Positions 470-27,252 of a stretch of DNA of 64,000 nt are shown here, in pieces (within the stretch, counting starts at the first letter, position 1; the number at the start of each line of letters is the position of its first letter). The translations under genes and the position numbers were made by a program. The DNA is from Obrimoposthia wandeli (taxonomy: Eukaryota). The stretch is taken from the NCBI GenBank assembly GCA_977020255.1, contig CDROCS010002422.1:186001-250000 (forward strand), in the 5' to 3' direction. A model generated the notes under the pieces. It made no database searches, was not told where the DNA came from, and saw nothing but the letters and a program-made list of their open reading frames with translations.

Positions 470-620
470 CATTGTTGTCCGGTTATAAAATGTAAGCCCT
501 TTACCCATTGATTTGTGGTTTTCTAGCATCGTTAATTGGATTATTTTAGCCAAATAACACTTATGGTTAACGTAAAATCAATGAGTGATAGAACAACAAA
601 AATTAAACCGGATATATATG
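470..620. mobile_element. MITE-like element, copy 1 (151 bp)
   Basis: Imperfect terminal inverted repeats CATTGTTGTCCGGTTA / TTAAACCGGATATATATG; flanked by TTTTCAAGC (461-469) and TTTTCAAAC (621-629), a 9-bp duplication with 1 mismatch; aligns with 12574-12724 and 13805-13919. Confidence 0.8.
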
Positions 621-927
621 TTTTCAAACAAATTGTACAACGTATTTTTTATGCTGCCAAATAGACACCAGCACTCCTAAATTTCGGTTCTAACCTTAAC
701 GTTATTTTAATGAATGTAAATTGGCTCGTTCAATGATTTGGCATCAAATAAGCATTTAAATAAATAAAGCTAAGTTATTCAATTCCATTGCTAATTTTTA
801 AGAATATATTAGTGTACACTTGAATTAGTATTTATTCACTTCACACCAAAAAACTTAGTTTTAATTTTTAGCGTGTACAATTTAATATGAGCATTTTGAA
901 AAAATTCAACGTTAAATAGGCTTTTAC

Positions 928-2364
928 TTGTTATCTAAAAAAATGAAAATCATGTTGTTATTGTGCTGCATTCTAGCACTCGGTTTCATCGCCACGAGCA
1001 TGGTTGGGTACTTTGTAGCCAGAGACTCTTTAACTAAACAAATTTCAACCGATACCCTACCTCTGATCGGCGATAACATCTATTCTGAAATCCAACGCGA
1101 TTTACTAAAACCGATCATAATTTCATCCCTCATGGCCAACGACACCTTCTTAAAAGATTGGGTAATAAGTGGTGAAAAAGACACGCAACAAATCACTAAA
1201 TACTTAAAAAGTATGCAAATAAATTACAATACTGTGACTAGTTTCTTTGTTTCCGATAAAACGCTTAAGTATTACCACCCGACAGGTGTATTTAAAACCA
1301 TCTCAGAGAAAGCCCCTGCCGACCAATGGTATTTTGCTACAAAAAATAATGGCAATACGCATCAGTTGAATGTCGATTACGATCGTTATGCTGATGATGC
1401 GCTGACCGTTTTTATCAATTATAAGTTATACGATGATAACCAAAATTTTCTTGGCATTACGGGTGTAGGACTTGCCTTAACCAAAGTACGTACTTTATTA
1501 GAGCACTATCAAAGAAAATACCAACGTGAAGTATTTTTTGTAGATGTAGCAGGCGAAGTTACCTTGCGCGGAGCGTTTTATAACGGCGATATTGATTTCA
1601 ATCAAATCAACAATGGCAAAACGCTAAAACAGCAGCTACTTAACTTTAGTAGCTCCTCTTTGACTTACCGCCAGGGAAATAACAATTTTTTGCTCGATAG
1701 CCGCTACATAGAAGAATTCAATTGGTATTTAATGGTTAGGCAAAGTGATCAGGCAATAAACAAAAATATTTTTGATTCTTTATTAATTAATTTACTGATT
1801 TCATTAATAATTACTATTACGATACTGGCCGTTACTTGGTTGACACTAAGCAGCTATCAACGTCAATTAGAAATAATGGCCACTACTGATAAACTAACTG
1901 GGCTCAATAACAGACACATGTTCGATCCAATTTTAGAGCAGATGTTCAAATATTCAACACGCAACCACACTACACTGTCGGTACTCATTTTAGATATTGA
2001 TAAGTTCAAGGACATCAATGATCAGTATGGCCATCCATTTGGTGACACAATACTCGTTGAAATTACTCATTTACTAAAATCTTCTGTCAGAAAATCTGAT
2101 ATTTTATGTCGCTGGGGTGGAGAAGAATTTTTACTGCTGATGCCCAACTGCAATGAAACAGAAATTGTCAGCTTTATTAAGCAGCTGCAACAAAAATTTT
2201 GCGACCATGATTTTTACCACGGTCAACAGCCTATCAAAATACAGTGGAGCGTGGGTGTTGCCCATAAAAAAGATACAGATAAACCTAGTGATTTTATTTA
2301 CCGCGCTGATCAAGCATTGTTACAAGCAAAAAATAGTGGCAGAAATAAAATGGTGATTGGGTAA
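928..2364 (+). CDS. Membrane diguanylate cyclase with periplasmic Cache-type sensor
   Basis: N-terminal TM, periplasmic domain, second TM, then D-x-LTGL-x-NR and RWGGEEF; RxxD I-site (RKSD) five residues before GGEEF. True start may be ATG 943. Confidence 0.9.
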   Translation: MLSKKMKIMLLLCCILALGFIATSMVGYFVARDSLTKQISTDTLPLIGDNIYSEIQRDLLKPIIISSLMANDTFLKDWVISGEKDTQQITKYLKSMQINYNTVTSFFVSDKTLKYYHPTGVFKTISEKAPADQWYFATKNNGNTHQLNVDYDRYADDALTVFINYKLYDDNQNFLGITGVGLALTKVRTLLEHYQRKYQREVFFVDVAGEVTLRGAFYNGDIDFNQINNGKTLKQQLLNFSSSSLTYRQGNNNFLLDSRYIEEFNWYLMVRQSDQAINKNIFDSLLINLLISLIITITILAVTWLTLSSYQRQLEIMATTDKLTGLNNRHMFDPILEQMFKYSTRNHTTLSVLILDIDKFKDINDQYGHPFGDTILVEITHLLKSSVRKSDILCRWGGEEFLLLMPNCNETEIVSFIKQLQQKFCDHDFYHGQQPIKIQWSVGVAHKKDTDKPSDFIYRADQALLQAKNSGRNKMVIG

Positions 2365-2487
2365 CAGCTGTTATTGCCTTTAACTGTGGTACTCTTTAAA
2401 CCAAAAATACTGCCTAAAAACGGTACCTGTATGCTTTAACTAAATAAGCTTAATAAAACCTTGTTAAAGCTATTTTTGGAGATAGAA

Positions 2488-3342
2488 ATGTTAGATGACA
2501 ACCAGCTAAGCAGCTATCAGAATAATGGTTATTGCGTAATCGAAGATTTCAAAAGTCTTGCACAATGTAAAGCTTTGCAATTGCGAGCAGAACAAATCGT
2601 CGGGGAGTTTTCCGCTGAAGACATTTCTATTTTTACCACAAAAGAACAGCAGCGTAATGCAGACGACTATTTTTTAAGTTCGGGTGATAAAATACGTTGT
2701 TTTTTCGAAGAAGAAGCAATCGATGCGAAAGGCAATATCACTGTCGATAAGAACAAAGCTATAAACAAATTAGGCCATGCTATGCATCAAAATGATGCGG
2801 TATTTAGAGATTTTAGTAGCGATGATAAACTGCAACAGATTTGTCAGAAAATTGGCTTTAAGGATCCTCGTTTACTGCAAAGCATGTACATATTCAAGCA
2901 GCCCAGAATTGGCGGTGAAGTCGATATTCATCAAGATTCTACCTTCTTATATACCGATCCATTAAGTGTAGTGGGTTTCTGGTTTGCGTTAGAAGACGCT
3001 ACACTAGAAAACGGCTGCCTTTGGGGGATGCCTAAAGGGCACAAACTTCCTTTAGAAAAAATAATGAAACGTAAAGCCAATAATACTGGCATAGAATTCA
3101 CACCCTTAGCTGACATCAAATATGACCAGCAAGATTTTATTCCCCTTGAAGTAAAAGCGGGTACTTTAATTATGTTTGATGGCCGTTTTCCACATTTTTC
3201 TAAGGCCAATAGATCTGAAAAAACACGCCACGCCTTCACGTTGCACATTATTGAAGGACAAGCTAAATATCCCGAGTTTAATTGGCTACAACGTGAAGAT
3301 AAACAAGCGTTTCCAAGCTTCTCAGAACTTAAGGCAATGTAA
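2488..3342 (+). CDS. Phytanoyl-CoA dioxygenase (PhyH) family Fe/2OG dioxygenase
   Basis: QSMYIFKQPRIGGEVDIHQD (HxD), WFALEDATLENGCLW, distal His in PHFS. ATG 2488 follows GGAG. Confidence 0.88.
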   Translation: MLDDNQLSSYQNNGYCVIEDFKSLAQCKALQLRAEQIVGEFSAEDISIFTTKEQQRNADDYFLSSGDKIRCFFEEEAIDAKGNITVDKNKAINKLGHAMHQNDAVFRDFSSDDKLQQICQKIGFKDPRLLQSMYIFKQPRIGGEVDIHQDSTFLYTDPLSVVGFWFALEDATLENGCLWGMPKGHKLPLEKIMKRKANNTGIEFTPLADIKYDQQDFIPLEVKAGTLIMFDGRFPHFSKANRSEKTRHAFTLHIIEGQAKYPEFNWLQREDKQAFPSFSELKAM

Positions 3343-3417
3343 GGTATTAAGCATTCAAATGCTAATTACTTCGCCACTAACTAACATCATTGACAACACA
3401 ACTACACTGAATAATTT

Positions 3418-4038
3418 ATGTCATTAACCGTACTCTCACTTTTTATCACCACATTCTTCTTCGTATCGATTACACCAGGCATGTGCATGCTACTGGCACT
3501 TACCTTGGGCATGTCTGTCGGCGTGCGCAAAACAATGTATATGATGCTTGGAGAAATGCTGGGAGTTGCAATCGTTGCAACTTTTGCAGCATTAGGCGTT
3601 GCTACTTTAATGCTTAAGCTTCCTCAAGCATTCGTCGTTTTAAAAATAGCGGGAGGAGCCTACTTAATTTGGCTAGGATACCAAATGTGGTGCTCAAGAG
3701 GAAAACTGGTACTCAGTGATACACAAAACTCAACACAGCAACCTAGCGCAAAGCAATTAGCTATCAATGGTTTTATTACCGCGATAGCGAACCCTAAAGG
3801 CTGGGCATTTTTGATCACTTTACTGCCATCATTTATTATTGCAGAGCAGCCTTTAGCGCCACAGTTAATAGTCATGATCTGCATCATTTTGTTACTTGAA
3901 TTTACGGCCATGATGCTTTATGCCAGTGGCGGAAAAGCACTTCGTCATTTATTGCTTAACAAAAACAATGTAAAGTTACTTAATCGTATCTCAGGTTCTT
4001 TGATGGTCATTGTAGGTTTTTGGCTAGCTTTTAGCTAA
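3418..4038 (+). CDS. LysE/RhtB family translocator
   Basis: SITPG, GGAYLIWLG and NPKGW motifs; about six hydrophobic helices. Confidence 0.88.
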   Translation: MSLTVLSLFITTFFFVSITPGMCMLLALTLGMSVGVRKTMYMMLGEMLGVAIVATFAALGVATLMLKLPQAFVVLKIAGGAYLIWLGYQMWCSRGKLVLSDTQNSTQQPSAKQLAINGFITAIANPKGWAFLITLLPSFIIAEQPLAPQLIVMICIILLLEFTAMMLYASGGKALRHLLLNKNNVKLLNRISGSLMVIVGFWLAFS

Positions 4039-4338
4039 AGGTAATCTCAATTGCTTTACCTGACGTCTTAAAATGTACTCTTTGCGACATTCTACTATTT
4101 TTATAAGCTTACGCATTCAACTCCTTTCATAGTTCTGCTACTCTATGATTTTTGGCATTAATGTACATTTTACTTTCGGTTAAGTGAGCTTAGATTGCTG
4201 AGTTTCTCCAATGAGCACATAGAGAGAAGTTCGTTTCAAAGTGATTACTTAACTAATAAATTGACACTGATGTAACAGATAACCAAATAGTGCTACCTAA
4301 CAATATCTGTACACGGATATGTGTACTGGAGAGAATTT

Positions 4339-4524
4339 ATGCAAAATGTTCAACCTTCAACACTCACACAATCGCCTAGTGTAGCCGTTTCAAATACTAA
4401 GCAAATTCTAGTAGCATTAACATTAGGCGTCGCTTTAGTTATGTTGGTTGGCTTCGCGCCTATGGAAGTTGTACATAACGCAGCTCATGATGCACGTCAT
4501 GCTTTTGCCTTTCCTTGCCATTAA
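4339..4524 (+). CDS. CbtB-like small membrane protein (putative cobalt transporter subunit)
   Basis: One TM helix and C-terminal HNAAHDARHAFAFPCH, typical of CbtB; GGAG before ATG 4339. Confidence 0.8.
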   Translation: MQNVQPSTLTQSPSVAVSNTKQILVALTLGVALVMLVGFAPMEVVHNAAHDARHAFAFPCH

Positions 4525-4540
4525 TCTCTTTAGCTAAATA

Positions 4541-4567
4541 ACCAAAGCCATTGTTAATGGCTTTGGT
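4541..4567 (+). terminator. Hairpin terminator after the cbtB-like gene
   Basis: ACCAAAGCCATT-GTT-AATGGCTTTGGT, perfect 12-bp stem. Confidence 0.7.
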
Positions 4568-4711
4568 ATTGTACCAGGTTTTTTCTGAGCCTAGCTTGGG
4601 CCCAAATTACTGATGCCGGCAGACCTTCTAATTGCTTTACCATTCACTTAAGCTAACACAAGAGCTAACACTATTAGTGCCATCACTAGCCGACAGCTTT
4701 GCACTCCTTTT

Positions 4712-4984
4712 TTGTTATTTTGCCAAAAAGAGCCGCTTTTTATAGCAGCACTCACTGCTCATAAAGCCAGTTTCATTCAAGAAAACCAATGGCAATTTAG
4801 TTTGCCTGAGTTATTTAACTTTCTACAAGCTTATTACCCTAATATCACTGATGATTACCTTACGTTTCGACGTTTATTATTTAACAGCCCTATCAATCAA
4901 CAACTTGGCCAATATCAAACCAGCATTGTTATCTTGAAACCAGCCGATCATGTAGATAACACTATTTATTGTTTACAAAATTAA
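4712..4984 (+). CDS. Hypothetical protein (start uncertain)
   Basis: 90-aa ORF with globular composition filling an otherwise empty interval; no recognisable motif. Confidence 0.5.
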   Translation: MLFCQKEPLFIAALTAHKASFIQENQWQFSLPELFNFLQAYYPNITDDYLTFRRLLFNSPINQQLGQYQTSIVILKPADHVDNTIYCLQN

Positions 4985-5232
4985 GTTCTAACCTTTATTG
5001 TGTTTGATTATCCGACAAAACCTTTCAGCTGGTTTTATGATCAGGATGCCAAGGTCTAATACTATTAATAGCCTCCTCTGTTAAAGTATCTGCACATTCT
5101 ACGCTAAAGATATTGATTCAATTTTATTAAGACTTAAAATCGTCATATTAAGTTATTACAATCTCATAGCTTTAGTGTTTAGCGCAGGTTCTTTAATCCA
5201 TCTAAATATCAGTCGAAAAAAGGAAGATTCAA

Positions 5233-5955
5233 ATGAGTAGAGTTGCATTAGTAACAGGCGGCACCAGAGGTATAGGTGAAGCAATTAGCACCAAACTTAA
5301 GCTTAAAGGATATAACGTTATTGCCACTTATGCCGGTAACGATCAAGCGGCAAAGTCGTTTACCGAACGCACTGAAATACCAACAATAAAATTTGATGTG
5401 TCTGATTTTGCAGCCACTAAAGCTGCTATTGAAAAGATTGAAGAAGACTTTGGCAGCATTGAAGTATTAGTTAATAATGCGGGTATTACCAAAGATGGTA
5501 CGATGCACCGAATGGATTTTGAGCAGTGGAATGCGGTAATTCAAACCAATCTTTCCTCTTGCTTTAATACTTGTCGCGCAGTGATAGATAATATGCGTGC
5601 TAAAGGCTTCGGGCGTATTGTGAATATTGGCTCTGTTAACGGCCAAGCAGGGCAATATGGTCAAGTGAATTACGCGGCGGCTAAATCAGGAATTCATGGT
5701 TTTACTAAAGCGCTTGCACAAGAAAATGCCGCTAAAGGTATCACCGTTAATGCAGTAGCGCCAGGTTATGTTGACACTGATATGGTAAGAGCTGTGCCGC
5801 CAGAAGTACTTGCAAAAATAATTTCAACTATTCCGGTAGGCCGTTTAGGTCAGCCTGAAGATATAGCGCGAACTGTTGAGTTTTTAGTGAGTGATAATGG
5901 CGGGTTCATCACCGGATCTACGCTGTCAATTAATGGTGGCCAGCACATGTACTAA
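5233..5955 (+). CDS. phaB: Acetoacetyl-CoA reductase
   Basis: TGGTRGIG, NNAGIT, GQAGQYGQVNYAAAKSG (YxxxK), NGGQHMY end; located in the PHA cluster. Confidence 0.92.
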   Translation: MSRVALVTGGTRGIGEAISTKLKLKGYNVIATYAGNDQAAKSFTERTEIPTIKFDVSDFAATKAAIEKIEEDFGSIEVLVNNAGITKDGTMHRMDFEQWNAVIQTNLSSCFNTCRAVIDNMRAKGFGRIVNIGSVNGQAGQYGQVNYAAAKSGIHGFTKALAQENAAKGITVNAVAPGYVDTDMVRAVPPEVLAKIISTIPVGRLGQPEDIARTVEFLVSDNGGFITGSTLSINGGQHMY

Positions 5956-5965
5956 GCTGCAAGTT

Positions 5966-6005
5966 ATATCACTGAGAGAGCTATGTAATAGCTACTCAGT
6001 GATAT
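5966..6005. terminator. Bidirectional hairpin between convergent phaB and phaZ
   Basis: ATATCACTGAG...AGCTAT-GTA-ATAGCT...CTCAGTGATAT. Confidence 0.65.
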
Positions 6006-6034
6006 TTATCTCTAGTTCTAGTTCTAAATACAGA

Positions 6035-7252
6035 TTAGCTATACTGCTTTATAAACTCTGTCATTAAAGGTCTTACTGAGCCACGAAATTTAGACCCACT
6101 AAATATACCATAATGCCCTGCACCTTCTTGTACATGATGCTTGCGCATATGCTGGGGAATATTTACACATATATCTTGTGCTGCCTGCGTTTGACCGATA
6201 CCAACGATATCATCCAACTCACCTTCAACCGTTAATAACGCAGTGTTTGTTATGCTGGCAAAATCAACTAGCTCACCTAAGTAAGTAATTTTGCCATTTG
6301 CCAATTCATTATCTTTAAAGATACGTTCTATCGTTTCTAAGTAGAACTCTGCCGGCATATCTAAAACAGCCATATATTCATCATAGAAGGCTCGAAAACG
6401 ATCTGCATCTTCCTGTTCACCAAAAAGTATATTTTGAAAAAACTGTAGATGCTTTTTAGCATGTGCTTGCGGGTTCATTGATAGAAACCCACCTAGCTGT
6501 AAGAAACCCGGATAGACCTTACGCCCTGTTCCTTTGTAGCCACTAGGCACTGACATAATCGCGTTACTTTTAAACCACTCAACGGTTTTTTTATTAGCAA
6601 ACTCATTAACTCGAGTCGGCGATTTAGCCACATCGATAGGCCCTGCCATTAAAGTGAGTGATATAGGTGTCACTTTACTTTGCTTTTGTGCCAATACAGC
6701 GGTTGCTATTAGCGCTTGTACTGCGGGTTGGCAAATCGCCACTACATGTACATCAGGTCCCATTGATTCCAAAAACCCTATCAAATATGTAACGTAGCAA
6801 TCAAAACTGAAATCACCTTCACTAACCGGGATATCACGCGCATCTAGCCAATCAGTGATATACACATCATGATCAATTAGCAACGCCTCTACGGTACCTT
6901 TTAAAAGCGTAGAATGATGACCAGACAATGGGGCGACCAGCAACACTTTGTCTCGATTTTTAACACCCTCAACAGTAAACCTTATTAAGTTACAAAACAC
7001 TTTATCATCGACTATGCTTTCATCTACCGCCATCTTGCGGCCATCAATTTCAATGTCTGTAATAGAAAAATCTAGCTTATCGTAACGTCTTGTTAAACGC
7101 ATACTAGACTCTAATAGTGCATTCGTAACACGCCCCATAGGTGTATAAGAAAAGGGGTTAAAAGGGTTGCAACTTAAATCGTGAATGGCACTAAAACCAT
7201 CGTGAAGAGTTTGGGTATTGCGGGTTAAATAATCGTAACTTTGGTAGCGCAT
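6035..7252 (-). CDS. phaZ: Intracellular polyhydroxyalkanoate depolymerase
   Basis: VLLVAPLSGHHSTLL, YITDW, VAICQP (catalytic Cys), LTVEGELDD, GHYGIF motifs. Confidence 0.92.
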   Translation of the reverse strand: MRYQSYDYLTRNTQTLHDGFSAIHDLSCNPFNPFSYTPMGRVTNALLESSMRLTRRYDKLDFSITDIEIDGRKMAVDESIVDDKVFCNLIRFTVEGVKNRDKVLLVAPLSGHHSTLLKGTVEALLIDHDVYITDWLDARDIPVSEGDFSFDCYVTYLIGFLESMGPDVHVVAICQPAVQALIATAVLAQKQSKVTPISLTLMAGPIDVAKSPTRVNEFANKKTVEWFKSNAIMSVPSGYKGTGRKVYPGFLQLGGFLSMNPQAHAKKHLQFFQNILFGEQEDADRFRAFYDEYMAVLDMPAEFYLETIERIFKDNELANGKITYLGELVDFASITNTALLTVEGELDDIVGIGQTQAAQDICVNIPQHMRKHHVQEGAGHYGIFSGSKFRGSVRPLMTEFIKQYS

Positions 7253-7340
7253 GACGTGGCCTTATTCGTTTACAATTCAATACTGCGGTCAACTTAGTGC
7301 CACAATAAATATTATAAACATGGCCTTCAGATAAGGTATT

Positions 7341-7373
7341 TTCAAGCTAATTTATACCGCAAATTAGCTTGAA
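7341..7373 (-). terminator. Hairpin downstream of phaP
   Basis: TTCAAGCTAATTT-ATACCGC-AAATTAGCTTGAA, perfect 13-bp stem. Confidence 0.6.
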
Positions 7374-7478
7374 GATATGCTGTAAACCCCTGCATTATTT
7401 ATCTAAAACGAGTAATCCTTAGATTTAAATTTGGATTCAGGTTCCGGTGCAGGTTTATCACATATTGTGCGAGGTTTA

Positions 7479-7841
7479 CTACTTCGCTGCTTTAGCTGAT
7501 TTAGCCGCTTGTGCAACGTTTGCTTGTGCATCTTCCATTACTTGCTTTAGTAACTCACCAGATTTTTCTTGAGTTTGCGAAATAATGGCATAGCTTTCTT
7601 CAGCGGCACTAACCACTGTTTCTTGCACTTCTTGAGCATAAGTCTTTTGTGATTCTGCTAGTGTATTAACATCTTTATTTTCAGCAGTTTTTTGTGCGAA
7701 AGCAGCGCCGCCGCTCATTAGGCTTGAAAATAAGTTGCTCTGCTGCTCAGCTAGTTGCTCAAAAGCTTTAGCATTAAGGTTAGCCAGATCAGTCAATGGC
7801 TTTAACGAATTCTGCATTTGTTCATTCATTTTATCAAACAT
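7479..7841 (-). CDS. phaP: Phasin (PHA granule protein)
   Basis: 120-aa Ala/Gln-rich helical protein (MFDKMNEQMQNSLKPLTDLANLNAKAFEQLAEQQ) in the PHA cluster, preceded by PhaR-type boxes. Confidence 0.82.
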   Translation of the reverse strand: MFDKMNEQMQNSLKPLTDLANLNAKAFEQLAEQQSNLFSSLMSGGAAFAQKTAENKDVNTLAESQKTYAQEVQETVVSAAEESYAIISQTQEKSGELLKQVMEDAQANVAQAAKSAKAAK

Positions 7842-7861
7842 ATTAGTGCTTCCCTTGTGTT

Positions 7862-7944
7862 TTGCTGCTATGCAACATTAAGATTTAATGCAATACTAAC
7901 TGTTCAAATTTTAATCGTCAAGCATTTTTTGCTGCACTGCAATA
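7862..7944. promoter_or_regulatory. Two putative PhaR operators upstream of phaP
   Basis: TTGCTGCTATGCAACA (7862-7877) and TTGCTGCACTGCAATA (7929-7944); same motif twice more at 8874 and 8940. Confidence 0.65.
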
Positions 7945-8043
7945 TAATTATCTATTTACTATCTTCCAAAACTGCCTTATCTACCACTTCCACCTTATTG
8001 CTAATTGGCTGTACTGTAGAAGCTGAAGCTGTATTTTTGGAAT

Positions 8044-8766
8044 CTAGTGCAACTGGTTTTTATGGCTGGCTGGCTTAAGAACCAAACTGCTAGCTGCTTT
8101 TTTTACAGACTTGACTGCTATTTTATCTGCTATTTTAGCGACTTCTTTGATTGCTGCTTTATTCTCTTGAACAGATGGTTTAACAGGTAATTTGGTGGGT
8201 GCTTTTACAGGTGTTTTTAGGAGTGCTCTAGGAGATGACTTAGCTTTTCCACCAACGTCAGACTTATTAGTTTTCTCACTTATTTGAGCGTTACTTGCAA
8301 CAACAGCATTTTTATTTACAGCAGGTTTTACTCGCGCGCGCTTAGCAGCTTTTTTCACTTGCATGGCTGGTTTTCTATCAGCTGGCGGTTGCTTCATTCC
8401 TAGCTCAAGCTTCGTCTTCACGACCTTACTTTCACTAGCATTGCTTGATTTCGGCACAACAGTATCATTAGTGCCCGCTTGCAAACACACTTGCATTATT
8501 TTAAAAGCATTCGCCCAATACTGCTGTGTTCTTTGGGTAGCAAGTGAGCTATGTTTTTTATGAGTCTCAATCAAATTAGGCAATCCTTGCGCTGCATTTA
8601 ACGCCTCTGGAATCTCACTCTGCTCAGTTATTGCCTGTGAAATAAAACGCGTTTGTGCACAAACGAGCTCTTCTATCAAACTAATATTGGCTGATAATTG
8701 CTTACTCACCTGAGTATTGAACGGTTCCAATAAATCCTGAAACTGCTTAAAGCTTTGCTGGTACAT
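8044..8766 (-). CDS. Phasin-like protein with Lys/Ala/Pro-rich basic C-terminal tail (PhaF/PhaM-like architecture)
   Basis: N-terminal ~95-aa amphipathic helical region followed by a low-complexity K/A/P/V tail (KTPVKAPTKLPVKP, KSVKKAA); located between phaR and phaP. Confidence 0.65.
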   Translation of the reverse strand: MYQQSFKQFQDLLEPFNTQVSKQLSANISLIEELVCAQTRFISQAITEQSEIPEALNAAQGLPNLIETHKKHSSLATQRTQQYWANAFKIMQVCLQAGTNDTVVPKSSNASESKVVKTKLELGMKQPPADRKPAMQVKKAAKRARVKPAVNKNAVVASNAQISEKTNKSDVGGKAKSSPRALLKTPVKAPTKLPVKPSVQENKAAIKEVAKIADKIAVKSVKKAASSLVLKPASHKNQLH

Positions 8767-8873
8767 AACAAACTCCTTTTATTAAAAATTTTCAATGATT
8801 TCCCTAGTGCTAAAATGACGCAGTAAATCGTTTTAACGTAACTTACTATTAGTTTTCTAAACTAAGGCGTCAT

Positions 8874-8955
8874 TTGCTGCATAGCAACATTATTCACATA
8901 AATTATACCCAGCAGTACAAAAAAAGGCCAACTATAATATTGCTGCATTGCACAA
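8874..8955. promoter_or_regulatory. Two putative PhaR operators upstream of the phasin-like gene
   Basis: TTGCTGCATAGCAACA (8874-8889) and TTGCTGCATTGCACAA (8940-8955). Confidence 0.65.
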
Positions 8956-9121
8956 ATTACATTCACTATTATACAATAATAGCTCTAGATAGAGATTCAA
9001 ATTGGATTCCAATTGAAGAGCATCAATAGAATTGAGCATCTGAGGTAAAGCTATAAAGAGGAGGGACAACCGGCCAGACAACTGAATATTGGCAAGCCTT
9101 AATCATTTTTTACATAGAGCT

Positions 9122-9571
9122 TTAATCGTTATCATCGGTTTTGTTTTTGCTTGCGCCTCCTTTATTGATATTCCACATATCCATATTTTGTTCCATCATT
9201 TTACCAAACACGCCCATCGGGCTTGATTCCACTATGTTTTTCATCATTCCCTGCACCGACTCTTGCTGCTCAAGGAACTGACTCATACTCTGATCTAAAT
9301 ACTGGCGAACAAATACTTGCATGTCACCGTCGTGAAAACGAATTAACTGTTTGAGCAACGAATCCGTTAGCAGCGATTGCTGATCATTTGTTTCAGCTTC
9401 ACTAATGATTTGCAGTAATACAATTTTTGTAAGATTGCTGCCATCTTTAGAACTCACTATTTCAAAATCAGTGTGCTCTAATACCAATTTTCGAATGTAG
9501 TCTAAGTTAACGTATTGGCTAGTTGATGTGTCGTACAAACGGCGGTTAGGGTATTTTTTTATGGTGATCAA
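9122..9571 (-). CDS. phaR: PHA synthesis repressor
   Basis: IKKYPNRRLYDTSTSQYVNL N-terminal motif, LLQIISEAE, LKQLIRF; TTG start. Confidence 0.93.
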   Translation of the reverse strand: MITIKKYPNRRLYDTSTSQYVNLDYIRKLVLEHTDFEIVSSKDGSNLTKIVLLQIISEAETNDQQSLLTDSLLKQLIRFHDGDMQVFVRQYLDQSMSQFLEQQESVQGMMKNIVESSPMGVFGKMMEQNMDMWNINKGGASKNKTDDND

Positions 9572-9685
9572 AAGATGGCCTCAACATGACAAAGCACTGG
9601 ATATCAAACCACGATATCTACAGTGCTATTTGGTATTACTTAAGTCATCATAAAGCACTCAGGTACTCACTAACAGCTTTACTGA

Positions 9686-11461
9686 TCACAGCCGTACTTT
9701 TACATAACTGCCCGGCGCATCTTCTATTGCTGCAAAGCCTTTTTTAGCTCCTGGTTGACGCGCTTTTACTTTTTTACCTGATTGCTCTGCTAGCCATTCA
9801 TGCCAATTTGGCCACCAAGAATGCTCATGCTTTTGCGCAGCTTTGAACCATTGCTCTGGGGTATCACCAAGCTCATCACTTATCCAGTGCGGATATTTAC
9901 CGCCTTCTTGTGGATTAATAACCCCCGCTAAGTGTCCAGAACCTGATAACACAAATTGCGTAGGGCCCGACACTAAATGCGCACCTTTGTAGGAGCCTTG
10001 CCAAGGTACAATGTGATCGGCAATCGTGGAAAGAAAATAACAAGGGACATCGATTTTTGCCAAATCAATACCAATATCATCAATCACAAAACCACCCTCA
10101 TCACGTAAGCAGTTATTAATATAAGTATTTTGTAGATATTGCTTAAAAGCAGCGGCGGGAAAATTGGTAGGATCGCTATTCCAATACAGTAAATCGAAAG
10201 GCGCAGGGTCTTTACCCTTTAAATAATTATTAACGAAGTATGACCAAAACAAGTTATTTTCACGTAGCATGCTAAAGCCTAAACCTAGCACCCTGCCATC
10301 AAAGTAACCTTTTTCATCAGCGGCTTTTTCGATCATCGGCAAGTTTTTTTCACTCAGATAAACCCCTACTTCCCCTGGTTCTTCAAAATCTAATAACGTC
10401 GTTAGGAAAGTTAAAGAATTAATCCGCTCGTCACCTTGCGCCCTTATATAAGCCGCAGCAGTTGCCAAAAGCGTACCGCCAACACACCAGCCCACCATAT
10501 TTACTTTGTCGCTGTTGGTGATTTCCTGCACTACATCTAAAGCCGCTAGTGGGCCTTGCTTCATGTAATCCGTAAAGTCTTTAGCTGCAAAACTTGCATC
10601 AGGATTGACCCAAGATATGATGAAGACACTGTGGCCTTGCTCTACTAGCCAGCGCACTAGCGATTTCTTCTGATCTAAATCTAGAATGTAATATTTATTA
10701 ATAAAAGGCGGTGTTATCAAAATAGGCTTTTTATAAACACTCTTGGTTACTGGCGTATAGTGAATTAACTGTATAAATTCATTTTGAAAAACAACTTTAC
10801 CAGGTGTTGCAGCGATATCTTCCCCTAATGTAAATGCATTGGGGTCCGTTTGGGTGATACTAAAAGCATCTGCAGGACTGCGCTGTAAATCTTGCATGAA
10901 GTTTTGCATCCCATCGACCAGGTTTTGCCCTTTGCTTTCTAGTATTTCGCGACACACTTCGGGGTTTGTCAAAATACTATTAGTTGGCGAGGAAGCATTT
11001 ATATATTGGCGAGTATAAAATTTTACTTGTTCTGCCACTTTAGGATCAGCAAATTCAAGTGAATCAACCATATTATGAAGCATTTTAGAATTGAGCAAAT
11101 AAGCTTGTTTGATATAACTGTAAACAGGGCTTTGTGACCACTCTTGATCTTTGAAACGATGATCCCCTTTCGCCTCACTTATCACGGGCTCAACTTTTTC
11201 ACCTAGCATGGCTTTGGTTGCGCTTTGCCATAGTTTCATTTGCTGAGTCATGAAATCCATTTGCTCAGTGACAAGCTTTGCAGTATCTACATTTGCCGAT
11301 GTTAATAATTCGCTAAATTGTTCTGCATCAACCGGATTCATCGCACTGGCAGCTTGTGGATTTAGAGATTTACTCAAAACATCCTGTAATTGCTGATTAA
11401 AAAGCTCGCTGAACTGCTCAATATATTCTAATACTGTTGCCTCTGAGTCTTGCTTCACCAT
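9686..11461 (-). CDS. phaC: Class I PHA synthase
   Basis: TPGKVVFQN, PPFINKYYILDL, lipase-like box GWCVGG, WNSD, DHIV, SGHLAG; ATG 11461 follows GGGAG. Confidence 0.95.
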   Translation of the reverse strand: MVKQDSEATVLEYIEQFSELFNQQLQDVLSKSLNPQAASAMNPVDAEQFSELLTSANVDTAKLVTEQMDFMTQQMKLWQSATKAMLGEKVEPVISEAKGDHRFKDQEWSQSPVYSYIKQAYLLNSKMLHNMVDSLEFADPKVAEQVKFYTRQYINASSPTNSILTNPEVCREILESKGQNLVDGMQNFMQDLQRSPADAFSITQTDPNAFTLGEDIAATPGKVVFQNEFIQLIHYTPVTKSVYKKPILITPPFINKYYILDLDQKKSLVRWLVEQGHSVFIISWVNPDASFAAKDFTDYMKQGPLAALDVVQEITNSDKVNMVGWCVGGTLLATAAAYIRAQGDERINSLTFLTTLLDFEEPGEVGVYLSEKNLPMIEKAADEKGYFDGRVLGLGFSMLRENNLFWSYFVNNYLKGKDPAPFDLLYWNSDPTNFPAAAFKQYLQNTYINNCLRDEGGFVIDDIGIDLAKIDVPCYFLSTIADHIVPWQGSYKGAHLVSGPTQFVLSGSGHLAGVINPQEGGKYPHWISDELGDTPEQWFKAAQKHEHSWWPNWHEWLAEQSGKKVKARQPGAKKGFAAIEDAPGSYVKVRL

Positions 11462-11829
11462 AAATCTCCCTATTGTCAATATAATGCCATCGTGCTGTGA
11501 TATGTACTTTAGCGGTTAGCTAAAGCTTGCGCAATGCGACTGTAGTGTCTATCAGCAAACTTAACGTATCTATGTTGCAAATCAATGTTGGCTAATATTT
11601 TATCAGACAAGTAGCTCTCAACAGAATTTAAACGAAACACTTTGTTATGCTAAAGCGTCTTCAGCAGACTTTAAAATCAGCATGCAACTTTGCCCATTTT
11701 CTTCCTATAAAAGCTCTTGGTACAGGCAAAGAAAGAAAATAACGAATTGAAAGAATTGGTTTAAAACAATGGATGATAACTTAACACTAAACGGCTTTCC
11801 TCTCGACGAAGGCCTAAAGCCTATTAGCG

Positions 11830-12516
11830 TTATAACGCCACCCCTTTTTCTTGGCGATGTGATCGTAACATAGACAGCATTTGGGACATTTGAACAGCCA
11901 TTAGAACTTGTTCTTTTTGTAAAATTTTAGCATGTTGTTTAATGATATTTAGTTGACGCTGTACACGCCCTTCATCAATCGGCTTTTGGCTTAGCTCTGC
12001 AATCACCGTGATTTCACAATATTGCTTATAGAGCACATCGTTATACATTAAGCTATCTAGCAATATTTTAAAAAGGGTATTTGCTTTTACAATTTGTAAG
12101 CGCAATGCATCATTACTGATCCTGCCTAACAATTGGCTATTTGCATTGTATACAAAAAAATAGTCACTGTTTTGCACATAATTTTGCAATAAAGCGCCAC
12201 CTTCTGACAGACTCTCAATATCTCTGCCAATTTTGTTTTGAAAATTTTCAAACACTATTTTTGATTCGACATGTAGTGCTTGCAAATAACCATCAATTTC
12301 ATTTTTATCCGCTTCATTCGCTAATTGCTGTTGGTCAAAAACGGTTCTAATAGCTACTTTTTTTGCATAATGAGCCGCAACTATGACACCTACGCACAAT
12401 CCGGCTAAAGAGCTTAACCAAACACTGTTACTCGACAATATATTGACCGATTCCTCTAAAGAAAACCAATTGGCGACTTCTGTAATAGTGTTATCTAGTA
12501 TTTGGGAAAATTCCAT
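11830..12516 (-). CDS. Hypothetical protein with N-terminal membrane segment
   Basis: 228-aa ORF, one hydrophobic helix near the N-terminus, no recognisable catalytic motif. Confidence 0.7.
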   Translation of the reverse strand: MEFSQILDNTITEVANWFSLEESVNILSSNSVWLSSLAGLCVGVIVAAHYAKKVAIRTVFDQQQLANEADKNEIDGYLQALHVESKIVFENFQNKIGRDIESLSEGGALLQNYVQNSDYFFVYNANSQLLGRISNDALRLQIVKANTLFKILLDSLMYNDVLYKQYCEITVIAELSQKPIDEGRVQRQLNIIKQHAKILQKEQVLMAVQMSQMLSMLRSHRQEKGVAL

Positions 12517-12573
12517 GCTTTAAATTTCTCTATTATTAGCTTTAAAATCTAATTCTTCTTGTTGATCTATTAT

Positions 12574-12724
12574 CATTGCTGTCCGGTTAAAAAGTGTAAG
12601 CACTCTAACTTATTGATTTGTGGCTTTCTAGCATAGGTAATTGGATTTTTTAGCCAAATAACACTTGTAGTTAACGTAAAATTAATGAGTTCATGAACAA
12701 CAAACGTTAAACTGGACACTAATG
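12574..12724. mobile_element. MITE-like element, copy 2 (151 bp)
   Basis: TIRs CATTGCTGTCCGGTTAA / TTAAACTGGACACTAATG; perfect 9-bp duplication ATCTATTAT at 12565-12573 and 12725-12733. Confidence 0.85.
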
Positions 12725-12872
12725 ATCTATTATAAAGGATCTGTAAGTAAAAGTTTTAACTCGCTGCATAGTTACATCTGCAAGTTAGTGTTTTTTGCGT
12801 CAACCTTTAAATATTAAACACACCGAATAAACAGCTTGTGCTGCCAGAAATCGCGCACTATTTAACGGATGT

Positions 12873-13778
12873 TTAATAGCGTTTGCGCTTTTTTTGACTC
12901 AAAAGCAAAAACAATCCACTACACATAACTAGCGCTCCTCCCATAAATGCATATTGATCTGGCAGTTGTTCGAAAATCAACCAGCCGAGTAATAACGCCC
13001 AAAATATTTGAGTATACATAAAAGGTGCAACCACTGTTGCCTCTGTATATTGATGCGCTGCTATGATTAAACTGTGTGCTACACCGCCAAATAAACCTAT
13101 TGAGATAAGCGCTAACCAAGGTAACAAACCAGTAGGAGTTTGCCAAAAAAATGGCACTAATAAAGTGCTCACTAATGCACCTATCATCGCGGTATAAAAC
13201 AAAGTAACAGGTAAGGGATCGGTGTTTGCCAGTTTGCGAGTAATCACATTGTATATTGCAGTACAACAAGCTGCACCGAAAACAAAAAGAGCACCTAATG
13301 CCAAATTGTCTTGTCCACTTTGCACTTCATGCAGTTGCGTACTTAATTCCATACCCGGCCTAACAATAACTAACGTCCCTATAAAACCAACAGCTATCGC
13401 TACCATAGCTGACAATTTAACTCGCTCACCCAGCAAGGGAATAGATAAAATAACCACCAGCGCAGGTACTGTAAAAAAGATTGCCGTTGCCTCCGCTAGG
13501 CCTATCATGGTTAACCCGTAAAAAAACAAGGCGGTATCTAGCAACAAAATTAGCGAGCGCAGAATTTGCATTGACAACCTATTCGCCCTAAAAATACTGT
13601 TCCCATATCGAGGCCACAACACCACCAACATCAGTAATAGGTGCCCTATATATCGCGCCCAGACGATTTGTGGGATGGGTAACATCTCTCCCAAATATTT
13701 CGCAAAGGCCTCTTGCACCGATATAAATGCCATTGCCCCCAACATGCACAATATTCCACGTGTTTGATTTGCTTCCAT
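12873..13778 (-). CDS. DMT/EamA family transporter
   Basis: Ten hydrophobic helices, LLGERV and IVRPG motifs, two EamA halves. Confidence 0.9.
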   Translation of the reverse strand: MEANQTRGILCMLGAMAFISVQEAFAKYLGEMLPIPQIVWARYIGHLLLMLVVLWPRYGNSIFRANRLSMQILRSLILLLDTALFFYGLTMIGLAEATAIFFTVPALVVILSIPLLGERVKLSAMVAIAVGFIGTLVIVRPGMELSTQLHEVQSGQDNLALGALFVFGAACCTAIYNVITRKLANTDPLPVTLFYTAMIGALVSTLLVPFFWQTPTGLLPWLALISIGLFGGVAHSLIIAAHQYTEATVVAPFMYTQIFWALLLGWLIFEQLPDQYAFMGGALVMCSGLFLLLSQKKRKRY

Positions 13779-13804
13779 GTAGATCCTAAAGAATTACTCA
13801 ATGT

Positions 13805-13919
13805 CATTGATTTGTGGTTTTCTAGCATAGTTGATTGGAATTTTTCAGCCAAATAACACTTATGGTTAACCTAAAATAAATGAGTTATAGAACAACAAAA
13901 ATTAAACTAGACACTAATG
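13805..13919. mobile_element. MITE-like element, copy 3 (115 bp, left end shortened by 36 bp)
   Basis: Same body and right end (TTAAACTAGACACTAATG); perfect 9-bp duplication ACTCAATGT at 13796-13804 and 13920-13928; begins at the internal CATTG. Confidence 0.82.
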
Positions 13920-14140
13920 ACTCAATGTATAAACACTTATTTAAAAACATATAAAAGCGACTCTGCCTCGGGCGAAATACAGATTAATTTCTTTAGAATA
14001 TATTAATAAGTTCGAAAACTATGGTTAGCGATAAACAGCTATTTAGGGCCAGTTCACAAATTTCATCTTAAAGTTAAATTTTTGATTTTAATAGGGATGA
14101 AATGAAATTAATTCATATTCAGCACCGAACATAGCGCTCT

Positions 14141-19245: not shown

Positions 19246-22200
19246 CTAAGCTGCGATCACTGCCTGTTGATAGCGCTGTAGTTTCGCATACTCACCGTTT
19301 AAGCTTAATAACTGCTGATGCGTGCCCTGCTCCATGATTTGCCCTTGATCTAACACTACAATTTTATCTGCATCCTCAATGCTTGCTAAGCGATGCGCAA
19401 TCACCAATGTCGTTCTGTGTTTCATCAGCATTGCTAGCGCTTTGTGTACCGCTGCCTCGCTTATAGCGTCCAGATGAGAAGTTGCTTCATCTAAAATCAA
19501 TATTGGCGCATCTCGCAAAAAAGCTCTAGCAATGGATAAGCGCTGGCGCTGCCCACCAGACAATGAAAAACCACGCTCGCCTACAATGGTATCTAACCCC
19601 TCTTTTTGCCCTGCGACAAAGTCGGCCAGCTGCGCTAGGTTTACTGCCCTTAGCAATTCTTGCTGTGTCGCTTGGGGTTTAGCCATCAGTAAATTTTCCT
19701 TAAGAGTATCGTTAAACAAATAGGTATCTTGCGCGACGATTGCCACAAACTGCCTGAAATGATCCAGTGGCATGTCTTTAATGTCAGTTCCATCAATGCT
19801 GATAGAACCTGTTTGTGGATCCCAAAAACGCATCAACAAATGCGCTAAGGTACTTTTACCTGCACCCGACGCCCCGACTAATGCAACTTTTGAGCCTGCT
19901 TCAAGTACTAAATCTAGTTTGTGGATCACTTTTGGTAAATCATCCACATAGCTAAAAGAGATACCTTTAAATTCTACTTTTAGCGCTTCACCATCACTGT
20001 TAGCGCTTTTAAGCATAGGCTTTTGGTTGCCGTTATCTTTAACACTTGGTTCGCTCTCTTCTACTTGCATTAACCTGCTAGTTGCCGCTAGCGTATCTGA
20101 AAGTTGGCGCCCTACATCTGCCACTTCTATTACTGGCAAAAAGGCCATCACTGCCACCAGCGCAATGAGCGGCAAATATACGCTATCAAAAGCGCCTGAA
20201 TTGGCCAAAGGCGCGCCAATAACTAACAGTAATAACGCTGAGCTTACAGTAATAAATTCCACCAGCACACTTTGCCCAGCACTGACTTTAAAGAACTTCA
20301 TACGTTGTGTTTTATGCTTTTCTATCAGCACTTCAAATTGCTCGCGACGCTTATCAGTAGCTTGATAATTTAGTAATTCAGACAAACCTTGCAAACTTTC
20401 AACGGTATGCGCCGATAAACTACCAAGCACAACCCGCGCTTTATTTGCCGCTGCATCAATGCGTTTGCGAAACAAAATTGGCATCACAAAAACTAGCAAA
20501 ATAAAGGGTAATAAAGTTAAGGCCAGCACAGTAGAAAAGTTGGCGATCAATACCAAAATAGCACTAGGCACTAAAATAGCCACGAACACTGGTGCTATGG
20601 TATGTGCGAAGAAGTATTCGACCATTTCTACATCATGTGTGGCTAAATTGATCAAATCACCACTGCGATGACGCACCATGAATGCAGGCGCTAAGCTCTC
20701 GAGCTTTTGAAATAGCTTGATGCGCATTTCAGATAACATTCTAAAAGCCATATCATGTGCCAACCAAGACTCTAGCCAGTGTAAAATTGCCGCTGCAATA
20801 GCACTGCCCACCAATAACTGCAGCCACAAGCTATAATCAGTGCCATTTTTTACCGCTGCGGCTGCCAGTGCAGAAAACACACTAACGGCGATATAGGTAA
20901 ATACCCGCGAGGTACCTAATATAAACGTGCCGATTAAGCGCCCTTTCCAATTAATCGCAAAAGACAGCAACATCGTGATAACTTGGCGCCAACTGTGTTT
21001 ATCTCCTTGTAATATACTATCTTGTTCAGTATCTAAGTTTTCTTGATTAGCATCTAGCTTCTCTTGATTAATAGTTGCGCTGCTTTGTGCCAGCACGCTT
21101 TCTTTGCTATTTTTTTGCACATCTGCTTTATTGACCCACAGCTTGTGCGCTGTATTTAATTGCGAAGCCATTAGCTGCGCATAAGCGCCTTTTTTAGCCA
21201 GCAATTGCGTATGACTGCCAATCTCAGCTACTCGCCCTTTATCTAGTAAGATAATTTGATCGCAGTTCATAATACTGGCCAGACGATGCGCTAAGATCAA
21301 AGTGGTGCGCCCTTTCATTAAACGCTCTAAAGCGATTTGAATGTGCGCTTCATTTTTGGCATCTACTGAGGAAAGTGCTTCATCGAGAATAAGAATCGGC
21401 GCATCGCGCAATAATGCTCTAGCGATAGCTATCCGCTGGCGCTGCCCACCGGATAAGCGCACACCGCGCTCACCAATAATACTGTTGTAGCCTCCATCAA
21501 GTTGCTCAATAAACTCATGTGCATTGGCCGCTTGCGTTGCTGCCATTAAGTGCTCGTCACTGACATCGATTGCACCTAGTAATAGGTTTTCTTTAACTGT
21601 GCCGTGAAATAAATGGGTGTTTTGGCTGACGATAGCAAATTGTGAACGTAGTTGTTTAAGCGATAATTGTGCAATATCGATTCCTCCAATACGTATCACC
21701 CCCGATTGTGGTTGGTAAAAGCGCATCAGCAAATTTAAGATAGTTGATTTTCCACCACCACTGCTACCCACCACACCAATTTGTTGACCCGGCGCTATGT
21801 TGAAACTTAAATTGTCATGCACTAAAGGCCCAGCGCTGTTATCGTTAAGTGTACTGCGCTTATCATAGGCAAAACTGACTTGCTCGAAACTCACTGACAT
21901 CTCTTTAAACGCGAGATCTTTAGCGTTGCTGTAGTCATCTGCCATGTCACTTTTAGCGTCTAAAATGCTAAAAACTTGCTTCGCGGCTGACTGCGCCAAC
22001 ATACCCGCATGCATTAATGAGCGTAATTCTCTAAGTGGTTTAAATACTTCAACACCCAACAGCAACACTAATAGTAAACTTTCAAAGCTCATGAGCCCTT
22101 CACTCACTCTATAAGCAGATAAGCTCAGCGCCGCTGCAGCACCTAGCGTAATCCCTATATCGGTAATCCCTCGCGCGAGTGAATTGGTAGACATAACCCA

Positions 22201-26787: not shown

Positions 26788-27231
26788 CTAAATAAAACTC
26801 AACAAATGCACGAGGCTATCCGCCTCTTTTACTTTAGCTATCGCGTCTTTACCGAACGGGCTGACCAATTATTAGACAAACGGGGATTAAATCGCGCACA
26901 CCACCGTATTCTGTACTTCGTGGATCAAAATAGTGAGGGCTCAGTTGGCGATTTGCTCAAGACACTTGCAATTACTAAACAAGCGCTAAATACACCTCTG
27001 CGTCAGTTAATTAGCATGGGGTTGGTGGAAACATCACAAAGCAAAAAAGATAAAAGAATCAAAATACTACGACTGACGGAAAGCGGTTCACAACTAAATA
27101 GCATGTTGACGGCCACACAATTTGAATTGCTAAATTCTGTATTCGATTCAGCAGAGCCAGAAGCCGAAAATGGCTGGAAAGAAATTATGCAGCTAATTGC
27201 TAATTTAGAGAAGCAAGTCGAAAAGAAATAA
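26779..27231 (+). CDS. MarR family transcriptional regulator
   Basis: GLNRAHHRILYFV, LAITKQALNTPLRQL, DKRIKILRLTESG wing motif. Confidence 0.9.
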   Translation: MIDLNKTQQMHEAIRLFYFSYRVFTERADQLLDKRGLNRAHHRILYFVDQNSEGSVGDLLKTLAITKQALNTPLRQLISMGLVETSQSKKDKRIKILRLTESGSQLNSMLTATQFELLNSVFDSAEPEAENGWKEIMQLIANLEKQVEKK

Positions 27232-27252
27232 AATTAGAGAAGCGAGAAGAAT

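What the first reader, a model, noticed from the sequence alone, without database searches (positions are those of the whole stretch)
470..13919. Small MITE family (151 bp, CAT-ended TIRs, 9-bp TSD) present three times in 14 kb
Seen in sequence: copies at 470-620, 12574-12724 and 13805-13919 align along their length. Each is flanked by a different 9-bp direct repeat (TTTTCAAGC/TTTTCAAAC, ATCTATTAT, ACTCAATGT), so they are independent insertions rather than a segmental duplication. TIR consensus is about CATT(A/G)NTGTCC(A/G)GTT(T)AA, and there is an internal inverted pair CATTGATTT/AAATCAATG in copy 1. All copies are intergenic, in the same orientation, and upstream of genes (SDR and DGC, the 228-aa ORF, the DMT). 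Established knowledge: DDE IS families such as IS4 create TSDs of about 9 bp. Inference: the element is mobilised in trans by a DDE transposase not in this window. Divergence between copies suggests an old, high-copy family that may rewire promoters.
Basis: partly seen in the sequence, partly recalled or inferred. Interest (0 to 1): 0.7.

Follow-up and report, generated by a model that had tools for sequence, protein, structure and literature searches.

The report
IS4-family MITE, about 170 copies
The three short repeats are real copies of a gene-less jumping element (a MITE) present about 170 times in this marine bacterium and matched to a resident IS4-type jumping gene elsewhere in the genome; it is well proven but an ordinary kind of bacterial mobile DNA.

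Summary
Window 470-620, 12574-12724 and 13805-13919 are copies of a roughly 152-bp non-coding element. Its terminal inverted repeats are CATTGCTGTCCGGTTAAA on the left and CATTAGTGTCCGGTTTAA on the right (reverse complement). Each copy has its own 9-bp target-site duplication.

The same assembly holds 339 such ends against 15 in the control, which means about 170 copies on at least 20 bacterial contigs. In a sample of 41 copies, 22 have a perfect 9-bp duplication and 31 have at most one mismatch. All 41 are intergenic, and there is no orientation bias.

The partner is a 1282-bp insertion sequence found outside the window. It has CACTAGTGTCCGG... ends, 9-bp duplications and a 390-aa transposase (DUF4372 plus DDE_Tnp_1). 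The transposase scores 267 bits on the NCBIfam IS4-family model (cut-off 115), and its DDE and YREK residues are intact. Size, ends and duplication length fit the IS4Sa subgroup.

Copy 3 is a one-off short form that used an internal CATTG pseudo-end.

I found no sign of promoter, terminator, Rfam family or stable-fold function.

This scan had already found the same family on another contig (note s1-211151). Verdict: a new member of a known kind, of low interest.

The parts
470..620 (+). MITE copy 1, full length at 151 bp, subfamily A. The right TIR is degenerate (CATATATATCCGGTTTAA). The flanking duplication is 461-469 TTTTCAAGC and 621-629 TTTTCAAAC (8 of 9 match). It lies between a divergent SDR (start at about 360, - strand) and a GGDEF/Cache diguanylate cyclase (928-2364, + strand).
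12574..12724 (+). MITE copy 2, full length at 151 bp, 92% identical to the family consensus. Its TIRs are CATTGCTGTCCGGTTAAA and CATTAGTGTCCAGTTTAA (reverse complement). The duplication ATCTATTAT is perfect, at 12565-12573 and 12725-12733. It lies between the DMT stop (12873) and the orf228 start (12516), antisense to both.
13805..13919 (+). MITE copy 3, a 115-bp short form. Its left end is the internal pseudo-end CATTGATTTGTGG (consensus position 38) and its right end is the normal outer TIR. The duplication ACTCAATGT is perfect, at 13796-13804 and 13920-13928. The left duplication ends 17 bp upstream of the DMT start codon (13778, - strand).
12873..13778 (-). DMT-family transporter gene (EamA domains) flanked by copies 2 and 3. 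It is not part of a composite transposon, because each MITE has its own duplication.

Best explanation
[quoted passage not shown] Its consensus is about 152 bp and it encodes no protein. It carries only the terminal inverted repeats, plus about 10 subterminal bases on the left, that the transposase of a resident IS4-family insertion sequence recognises.

That transposase is a DDE enzyme with the YREK motif, made from full-length 1282-bp copies elsewhere in the genome. It is inferred to bind the MITE ends in trans, excise the element and insert it with 9-bp staggered cuts. The staggered cuts produce the 9-bp duplications. There is a mild preference for a palindromic A-N2-T-N-A-N2-T target.

Copies survive only between genes and in either orientation, as expected for selfish DNA without a strand-specific role.

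Shown here: the element's anatomy, its copy number, the duplications, the matching IS with intact catalytic residues, and the target preference. Inferred: the cut-and-paste chemistry (by analogy with Tn5 and Tn10), and which IS lineage drove the amplification. The MITE ends start with CAT, like the right end of a decayed IS copy on contig C5249. The four intact IS copies start with CAC.
For: **Copy number**
- The assembly holds 339 TIR matches at up to one mismatch, against 15 for the reversed control.
- A BLAST first look found 185 candidates.

**Duplications**
- Of 41 copies, 22 have a perfect 9-bp duplication and 31 have at most one mismatch, and every duplication is a different sequence.
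- Of 10 further copies, 8 show 7 to 9 of 9 matching positions.

**Target preference**
- Among 30 sites: A at position 1 in 27, T at position 4 in 22, A at position 6 in 17, T at position 9 in 23.

**The matching IS**
- It is 1282-1283 bp long with ends CACTAGTGTCCGG(T/C)TTAA.
- Perfect 9-bp duplications flank 4 of the 5 copies examined.
- The transposase matches NCBIfam NF033592 (IS4 family) at 267 bits, cut-off 115.
- It has Pfam DUF4372 plus DDE_Tnp_1.
- D123, D189, E291 and the Y284-R287-E291-K298 motif are invariant across 9 relatives.
- Four copies are intact and 98-100% identical.

**Link between MITE and IS**
- The MITE's left 30 bp and right 18 bp align to the left and right ends of the IS.
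- The decayed IS at L171 1392-2672 has a right end starting CATTAGTGTCCGGTTAAA.

**Behaviour of the copies**
- None of the 41 insertion sites lies in an ORF of 150 aa or more, and orientation relative to neighbours is 15 opposite against 13 same.
- Pairs at different sites are up to 98.7% identical.

**The same kind of element elsewhere**
- Other phyla hold full-length ISs and 223-283-bp MITEs with the same TIR core and 9-bp duplications.
- The named relative ISGme2 has the same core and a 9-bp duplication.
Against: - No empty site (a single 9-mer without the element) could be examined in a related strain, so excision and insertion are inferred from structure only.
- Every intact IS copy ends in CAC, while about 160 MITE copies end in CAT. 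Only 21 CAC ends exist in the genome. Mobilisation by the living IS is therefore unproven.
- Beyond about 30 bp on the left and 18 bp on the right, the MITE interior shows no clear homology to the IS. It is not a simple internal-deletion derivative of the IS copies seen here.
Confidence: 0.93

Rival explanations
1. The family is a fossil. Its own CAT-ended autonomous partner has decayed, and the intact CAC-ended IS does not recognise the MITE ends. The copies in the window would then be immobile relics rather than elements that can still be moved.
For: - All four intact IS copies have CAC ends, and only one MITE with CAC at both ends was found; two further lone CAC ends were not examined.
- The only full-length IS with a CAT end carries stop codons.
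- Median divergence from the consensus is 7%.
- About 10% of duplication positions are mismatched.
Against: - Some MITE pairs at different sites are 98-99% identical.
- The ends differ from the IS ends mainly at position 3. That position is reported as relaxed in the IS4Sa subgroup (PMC2266710).
- Copy 3 shows that the enzyme tolerates a much more divergent end, matching only 11 of 18 positions.
Confidence: 0.3
2. The element has been recruited for regulation. Copies would supply promoters, terminators or a structured RNA to neighbouring genes.
For: - All copies are intergenic.
- Copy 3's left duplication ends 17 bp upstream of the DMT start codon, and copy 1 lies in a divergent promoter region.
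Against: - No promoter-like or terminator-like consensus lies inside the window copies.
- The folding energy is not unusual, with z-scores of -0.5 for DNA and -1.1 for RNA.
- No Rfam family matches.
- There is no orientation bias relative to neighbouring genes.
Confidence: 0.07
3. The repeats are REP/BIME-like palindromic units, or remnants of a segmental duplication or composite transposon around the DMT gene, and not a transposase-mobilised MITE.
For: - The element is a long imperfect palindrome; its arms resemble each other over about 47 bp.
- Copies 2 and 3 bracket the DMT gene.
Against: - Each copy has its own 9-bp duplication.
- A matching IS with the same ends and the same duplication length exists.
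- Flanking sequences are unrelated between copies.
- DMT homologues (68-72% DNA identity, not syntenic) on other contigs carry no copy.
Confidence: 0.02

Closest known systems
IS4 family, IS4Sa subgroup (De Palmenaer et al. 2008, PMC2266710); nearest named elements ISGme2 (Geobacter metallireducens) and ISRm16 (Sinorhizobium meliloti)
   Same: - The parent IS has a DDE plus YREK transposase.
- Its ends fit the subgroup pattern CA------T, its size of 1282 bp falls in the 1150-1750 range, and its 9-bp duplication falls in the 8-10 range.
- ISGme2 and ISRm16 share the TGTCCGG core at TIR positions 7-13, and ISGme2 has a 9-bp duplication.
   Different: - The transposase is only 40% identical to ISGme2 and ISRm16.
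- The closest database proteins, 84-96% identical, are unnamed metagenomic 'IS4 transposase' entries.
- The subgroup was assigned from the published table, not from a tree.
MIC231 / IS231 of Bacillus cereus (IS4 family non-autonomous cassettes moved in trans)
   Same: Both are transposase-less elements bounded by IS4-family ends. For MIC231, trans-mobilisation by the matching IS was shown experimentally (reviewed in PMC6199540).
   Different: MIC231 is 0.7-3 kb, carries passenger genes and makes 10-12-bp duplications. This element is 152 bp, has no ORF and makes 9-bp duplications.
Tn5 (IS50) and Tn10 (IS10), the mechanistic models of the IS4 family
   Same: Both make 9-bp duplications, have a symmetric target preference and use a DDE/YREK transposase. 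The mechanism is established knowledge; the anatomy was tested here.
   Different: Their ends start CT rather than CA(T/C). Sequence similarity is too low for a PDB hit by phmmer. No hairpin intermediate has been shown for this element.
High-copy bacterial MITEs in general (for example Correia, RUP, ERIC)
   Same: All are small, AT-rich, TIR-bounded, intergenic and multi-copy. The MITE definition is taken from PMC4596501.
   Different: They come from different parent IS families and make different duplication lengths. About 170 copies is above the 10-20 quoted as typical for bacteria in PMC4596501, but it is not unprecedented (the last point is from my own knowledge).

Membership tests
MITE (bacterial non-autonomous DNA transposon) | Small size (50-1000 bp) and no transposase ORF | tested here: met
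   The consensus is 152 bp. Variants of 48, 115 and 259 bp exist. No ORF of 60 aa or more lies wholly within a copy; the one listed ORF that overlaps copy 3 (13646-13852, 68 aa) runs on into the flank.
MITE (bacterial non-autonomous DNA transposon) | Terminal inverted repeats | tested here: met
   An 18-20-bp TIR, with each position conserved in at least 90% of 39 copies.
MITE (bacterial non-autonomous DNA transposon) | Target-site duplications of fixed length that differ in sequence between copies | tested here: met
   The duplication is 9 bp. It is perfect in 22 of 41 copies and has at most one mismatch in 31 of 41.
MITE (bacterial non-autonomous DNA transposon) | Multiple dispersed copies | tested here: met
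   339 ends against 15 in the control, spread over at least 20 contigs.
MITE (bacterial non-autonomous DNA transposon) | A matching autonomous element with the same ends and duplication length | tested here: met
   A 1282-bp IS whose ends match in 17 of 18 positions, with 9-bp duplications.
MITE (bacterial non-autonomous DNA transposon) | Presence/absence polymorphism (empty sites) or demonstrated mobility | not testable with these tools
G000 has no relatives in the collection. No empty site exists among the loci held.
IS4 family (parent element) | DDE transposase with the Y-(2)-R-(3)-E-(6)-K motif | tested here: met
   NF033592 scores 267 bits against a cut-off of 115. PF01609 scores 98 bits. 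D123, D189, E291, Y284, R287 and K298 are invariant.
IS4 family (parent element) | Duplications of about 8-13 bp and ends starting with CA | tested here: met
   9-bp duplications and CAC or CAT ends. The family table is in PMC2266710.
IS4Sa subgroup | Ends CA------T, size 1150-1750 bp, direct repeats of 8-10 bp | tested here: met
   The end CACTAGTGT has T at position 9. The size is 1282 bp and the duplication is 9 bp.
IS4Sa subgroup | Transposase clusters with IS4Sa members in a phylogeny | not tested
   No ISfinder reference sequences were available. Only ISGme2 and ISRm16 were compared, at 40% identity.
REP/BIME or structured RNA element | Stable conserved hairpin, no duplications, strand-specific placement | tested here: not met
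   Duplications are present. Fold z-scores are -0.5 and -1.1. There is no Rfam match and no orientation bias.

The most novel reading that the evidence does not exclude
The family could be a natural record of relaxed end recognition by an IS4Sa-type transposase, in two ways.

- About 160 CAT-ended MITEs would be cross-mobilised by a CAC-ended IS.
- The enzyme can also use an internal pseudo-end that shares only 11 of 18 TIR positions. Copy 3, with a perfect 9-bp duplication, is the example.

If so, the nested CATTG repeats inside the element would be functional secondary ends rather than chance palindromes.
Probability: 0.15. Interest if true: 0.35.

Novelty: new member of a known kind. Interest (0 to 1): 0.2.

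Why it matters
The main value is for annotation. About 170 unannotated 152-bp insertions and a handful of IS4-family elements explain many intergenic repeats in this marine gammaproteobacterium, and probably some contig breaks as well. They should be masked before looking for regulatory motifs.

The family gives a clean, well-sampled 9-bp target logo for a poorly studied IS4 clade (DUF4372-type, TGTCCGG-core ends) that occurs across phyla and has produced MITEs more than once.

It does not open a new biological question.

Tried and rejected
**Composite transposon.** Two pairs of copies bracket genes: window copies 2 and 3 around the DMT gene, and two copies in L031 around a LysR regulator and a MipA-like gene. 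Each copy has its own duplication and there is no transposase between them, so this idea was rejected.

**A 115-bp short-form subfamily.** Of 53 genome copies matching the inner-end plus right-end pattern, 36 also match TGTCCGG exactly at the expected distance upstream. Of the other 17, six are full-length copies already held (five with a mutated core), one is copy 3, and ten were fetched. Nine of those ten are full-length copies with point mutations in the TIR core, and one has a small TIR deletion. Copy 3 is therefore unique.

**Empty sites**
- The own-genome search with the DMT region found only homologues of 68-72% DNA identity, without synteny and without the MITE.
- Reconstructed empty sites found no uninterrupted paralogue among the loci held.

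**Relatives**
- G000 has no relatives in the collection.
- Re-centring on a genome reached through L115 gave only PhaC matches of 48% identity or less, so I dropped this route.

**Distribution**
It returned mostly other phyla. About 139 chance hits would be expected for this pattern, but several of the hits are real IS or MITE ends.
- Two exact-pattern scans of JGI metagenome contigs, one for each MITE-specific end, found nothing.
- A blastn search against plasmids found nothing.

**Whole-contig fetch.** A later small request of 2.5 kb was accepted.

**Solved structures.** A phmmer search of the transposase against the PDB found no match.
Full report
**1. The observation**

- Copy 1 (470-620) is flanked by TTTTCAAGC and TTTTCAAAC.
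- Copy 2 (12574-12724) is flanked by ATCTATTAT on both sides.
- Copy 3 (13805-13919) is flanked by ACTCAATGT on both sides.

The degenerate end motif CATTRSTGTCCGGTTWAA occurs 4 times in the window at up to 3 mismatches, against 0.28 expected from shuffles. The repeat finder sees only these three members in the 64 kb.

Copies 1 and 2 are full length. Copy 3 lacks the first 37 bp. It starts at an internal CATTGATTTGTGG that resembles the true end in 11 of 18 positions.

**2. Genome-wide picture**

The window is C2422:186001-250000 of a 1.35-Gb, 6912-contig assembly that clearly holds many organisms.

The element is confined to a set of bacterial contigs (C84, C1004, C1089, C1143, C2027, C2357, C2422, C2469, C2735, C2749, C2814, C2866 and others).
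- The assembly has 339 end matches at up to one mismatch, against 15 for the reversed control.
- BLAST found 185 first-look candidates.
- Together these point to roughly 170 copies.

The host is a gammaproteobacterium with 40% G+C. Its DMT protein is 96% identical to one from a MAG labelled Oceanospirillaceae. Earlier scan notes call other pieces of this assembly Colwellia-like. I did not resolve the taxonomy.

**3. Anatomy of the family**

In 41 non-redundant copies with flanks:
- 22 have a perfect 9-bp duplication, 9 have one mismatch, and the rest are more decayed.
- Every duplication is a different sequence.
- Eight of ten further copies show 7 to 9 of 9 matching positions.

Thirty reconstructed targets show a palindromic preference: A at position 1 in 27 of 30, T at position 4 in 22, A at position 6 in 17, and T at position 9 in 23. 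The flank is T-rich upstream and A-rich downstream. This kind of symmetric preference is known for Tn5 and Tn10 (established knowledge).

The 152-bp consensus has 18-20-bp TIRs. It also has a second, inner inverted pair: CTCATTGATTT at positions 36-46 and AAATCAATGAG at positions 107-117.

Median identity to the consensus is 93%. Pairs at different sites reach 98.7%.

Two subfamilies share the arms but differ in the central 45 bp or so. About 60% are type A, including all three window copies, and about 40% are type B.

Size variants with perfect duplications include:
- a 48-bp element made of two ends only (L034 1033-1080);
- a 259-bp nested copy (L033 1390-1648).

**4. The partner element**

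A search with Pfam DDE_Tnp_1 and then with the protein itself found four intact copies that are 98-100% identical, one intact copy at 62% identity, and several decayed copies. The element is 1282-1283 bp long.
- Its ends are CACTAGTGTCCGGCTTAA and CACTAGTGTCCGGTTAAG. They match the MITE ends in 17 of 18 positions.
- Perfect 9-bp duplications flank 4 of the 5 copies examined.
- The 390-aa protein has DUF4372 plus DDE_Tnp_1.
- It scores 267 bits on NCBIfam NF033592, 'IS4 family transposase', against a cut-off of 115.
- D123, D189 and E291, and Y284-(2)-R287-(3)-E291-(6)-K298, are invariant in an alignment with relatives that include ISGme2 and ISRm16.

Size, end pattern (CA------T) and duplication length fit the IS4Sa subgroup in Table 1 of PMC2266710. 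That paper also reports a relaxed third end nucleotide in this subgroup.

The nearest named elements in the plasmid collection are ISGme2 and ISRm16, both at 40% identity. Both share the TGTCCGG core at end positions 7-13. ISGme2 is flanked by a 9-bp repeat.

The MITE aligns to the IS only over about 30 bp at the left end and about 18 bp at the right end.

A decayed full-length copy on C5249 (L171 1392-2672, 83% aa identity, with stop codons) has a right end starting CATTAGTGTCCGGTTAAA. Only 21 CAC-type ends exist in the genome.

The MITE burst was therefore probably driven by an older lineage with at least one CAT end. Whether the living CAC-ended IS can still move the MITE is open.

**5. Function beyond selfish spread**

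None of the 41 reconstructed insertion sites lies in an ORF of 150 aa or more.

Orientation relative to co-directional neighbouring genes is 15 opposite against 13 same. Seven copies lie between convergent genes and three between divergent genes.

Further negative results:
- No promoter-like or terminator-like consensus falls inside copies 2 or 3.
- Folding energies are ordinary, with z-scores of -0.5 and -1.1.
- No Rfam family matches.

Copies 2 and 3 sit in the two spacers of the co-directional ogt, DMT and orf228 genes, so they may simply be read through. This is an inference.

**6. Copy 3**

A perfect 9-bp duplication directly abuts the internal CATTG. The short form was therefore transposed using that pseudo-end together with the normal right end. 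It was not truncated after insertion.

Among the 53 genome copies that match the inner-end plus right-end pattern, copy 3 is the only such case. The other candidates were full-length copies with point mutations or a small deletion in the left TIR.

**7. Distribution**

The same end motif occurs in unrelated phyla.
- In Bacteroidota, Burkholderiales and other MAGs it sits next to 33-39%-identical transposases. One example is a 1313-bp element with a perfect 9-bp duplication in L076.
- It also forms 223-283-bp MITE-like pairs with 9-bp duplications (L083, L131, L148).

The specific MITE ends of this family were not found in JGI metagenome contigs or in plasmids.

**8. What could not be done**

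- G000 has no relatives in the collection.

As a result, empty sites in sister strains and read-level polymorphism remain untested.

**9. Verdict**

The scan had already described the same family from another contig: note s1-211151, a 259-bp nested copy on C2357 with the IS 27 kb away. My independent results agree with that note.

It is a new member of a known kind and of low general interest. The minor points worth noting are the palindromic 9-bp target logo, the CAT/CAC end mismatch with the living IS, and one clear case of use of an internal pseudo-end.

Noticed in passing
L021 1342-1652 (G000:C1004:77116-77426): Two MITE copies lie in tandem, separated by the 9-mer AACTTAATT. The pair is flanked by AGCTTAGTT on the left and AACTTAATT on the right, so the same target appears three times. 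The two copies are only 92% identical to each other. This could be re-use of the same 9-bp target or an old unequal crossover.
   Followed up: partly
L034 1033-1080 (G000:C2422:56532-56579): A 48-bp mini-element consisting of just the two TIRs, with a perfect 9-bp duplication ATATTAGAT. It is probably close to the minimal substrate for the transposase.
   Followed up: partly
window 19478-19587 and 21371-21480: Another direct-repeat pair of about 110 bp at 75% identity, unrelated to this MITE. It was not examined.
   Followed up: no
L083 4214-4496, L131 1322-1603, L148 2291-2513; L076 around 655-1967: Genomes of other phyla carry elements with the same CATT..TGTCCGGTTTAA ends and 9-bp duplications. 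These include 223-283-bp MITE-like elements (for example in a Defluviicoccus MAG) and a 1313-bp IS in a Chitinophagaceae MAG. This IS4 clade has therefore produced MITEs repeatedly.
   Followed up: partly
G000 contigs, for example C1089:229191-229306 and C2422:139215-139330: A second subfamily (type B, about 40% of copies) shares both arms with the window copies but has a different central 45 bp or so (CTATCATGGAAAAATAGATATTTTTTAGCTAAGGAG...).
   Followed up: partly
L043 41-193 (G000:C1089:705526-705678): This is the one MITE-sized element with CAC at both ends, like the living IS. It lies about 1.1 kb from an intact IS copy, and its duplication matches in 7 of 9 positions.
   Followed up: no
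window 27228-28566: A nine-unit tandem array of 144/135-bp units. It is already covered by another note of this scan (s1-200861) and is unrelated to the MITE.
   Followed up: no
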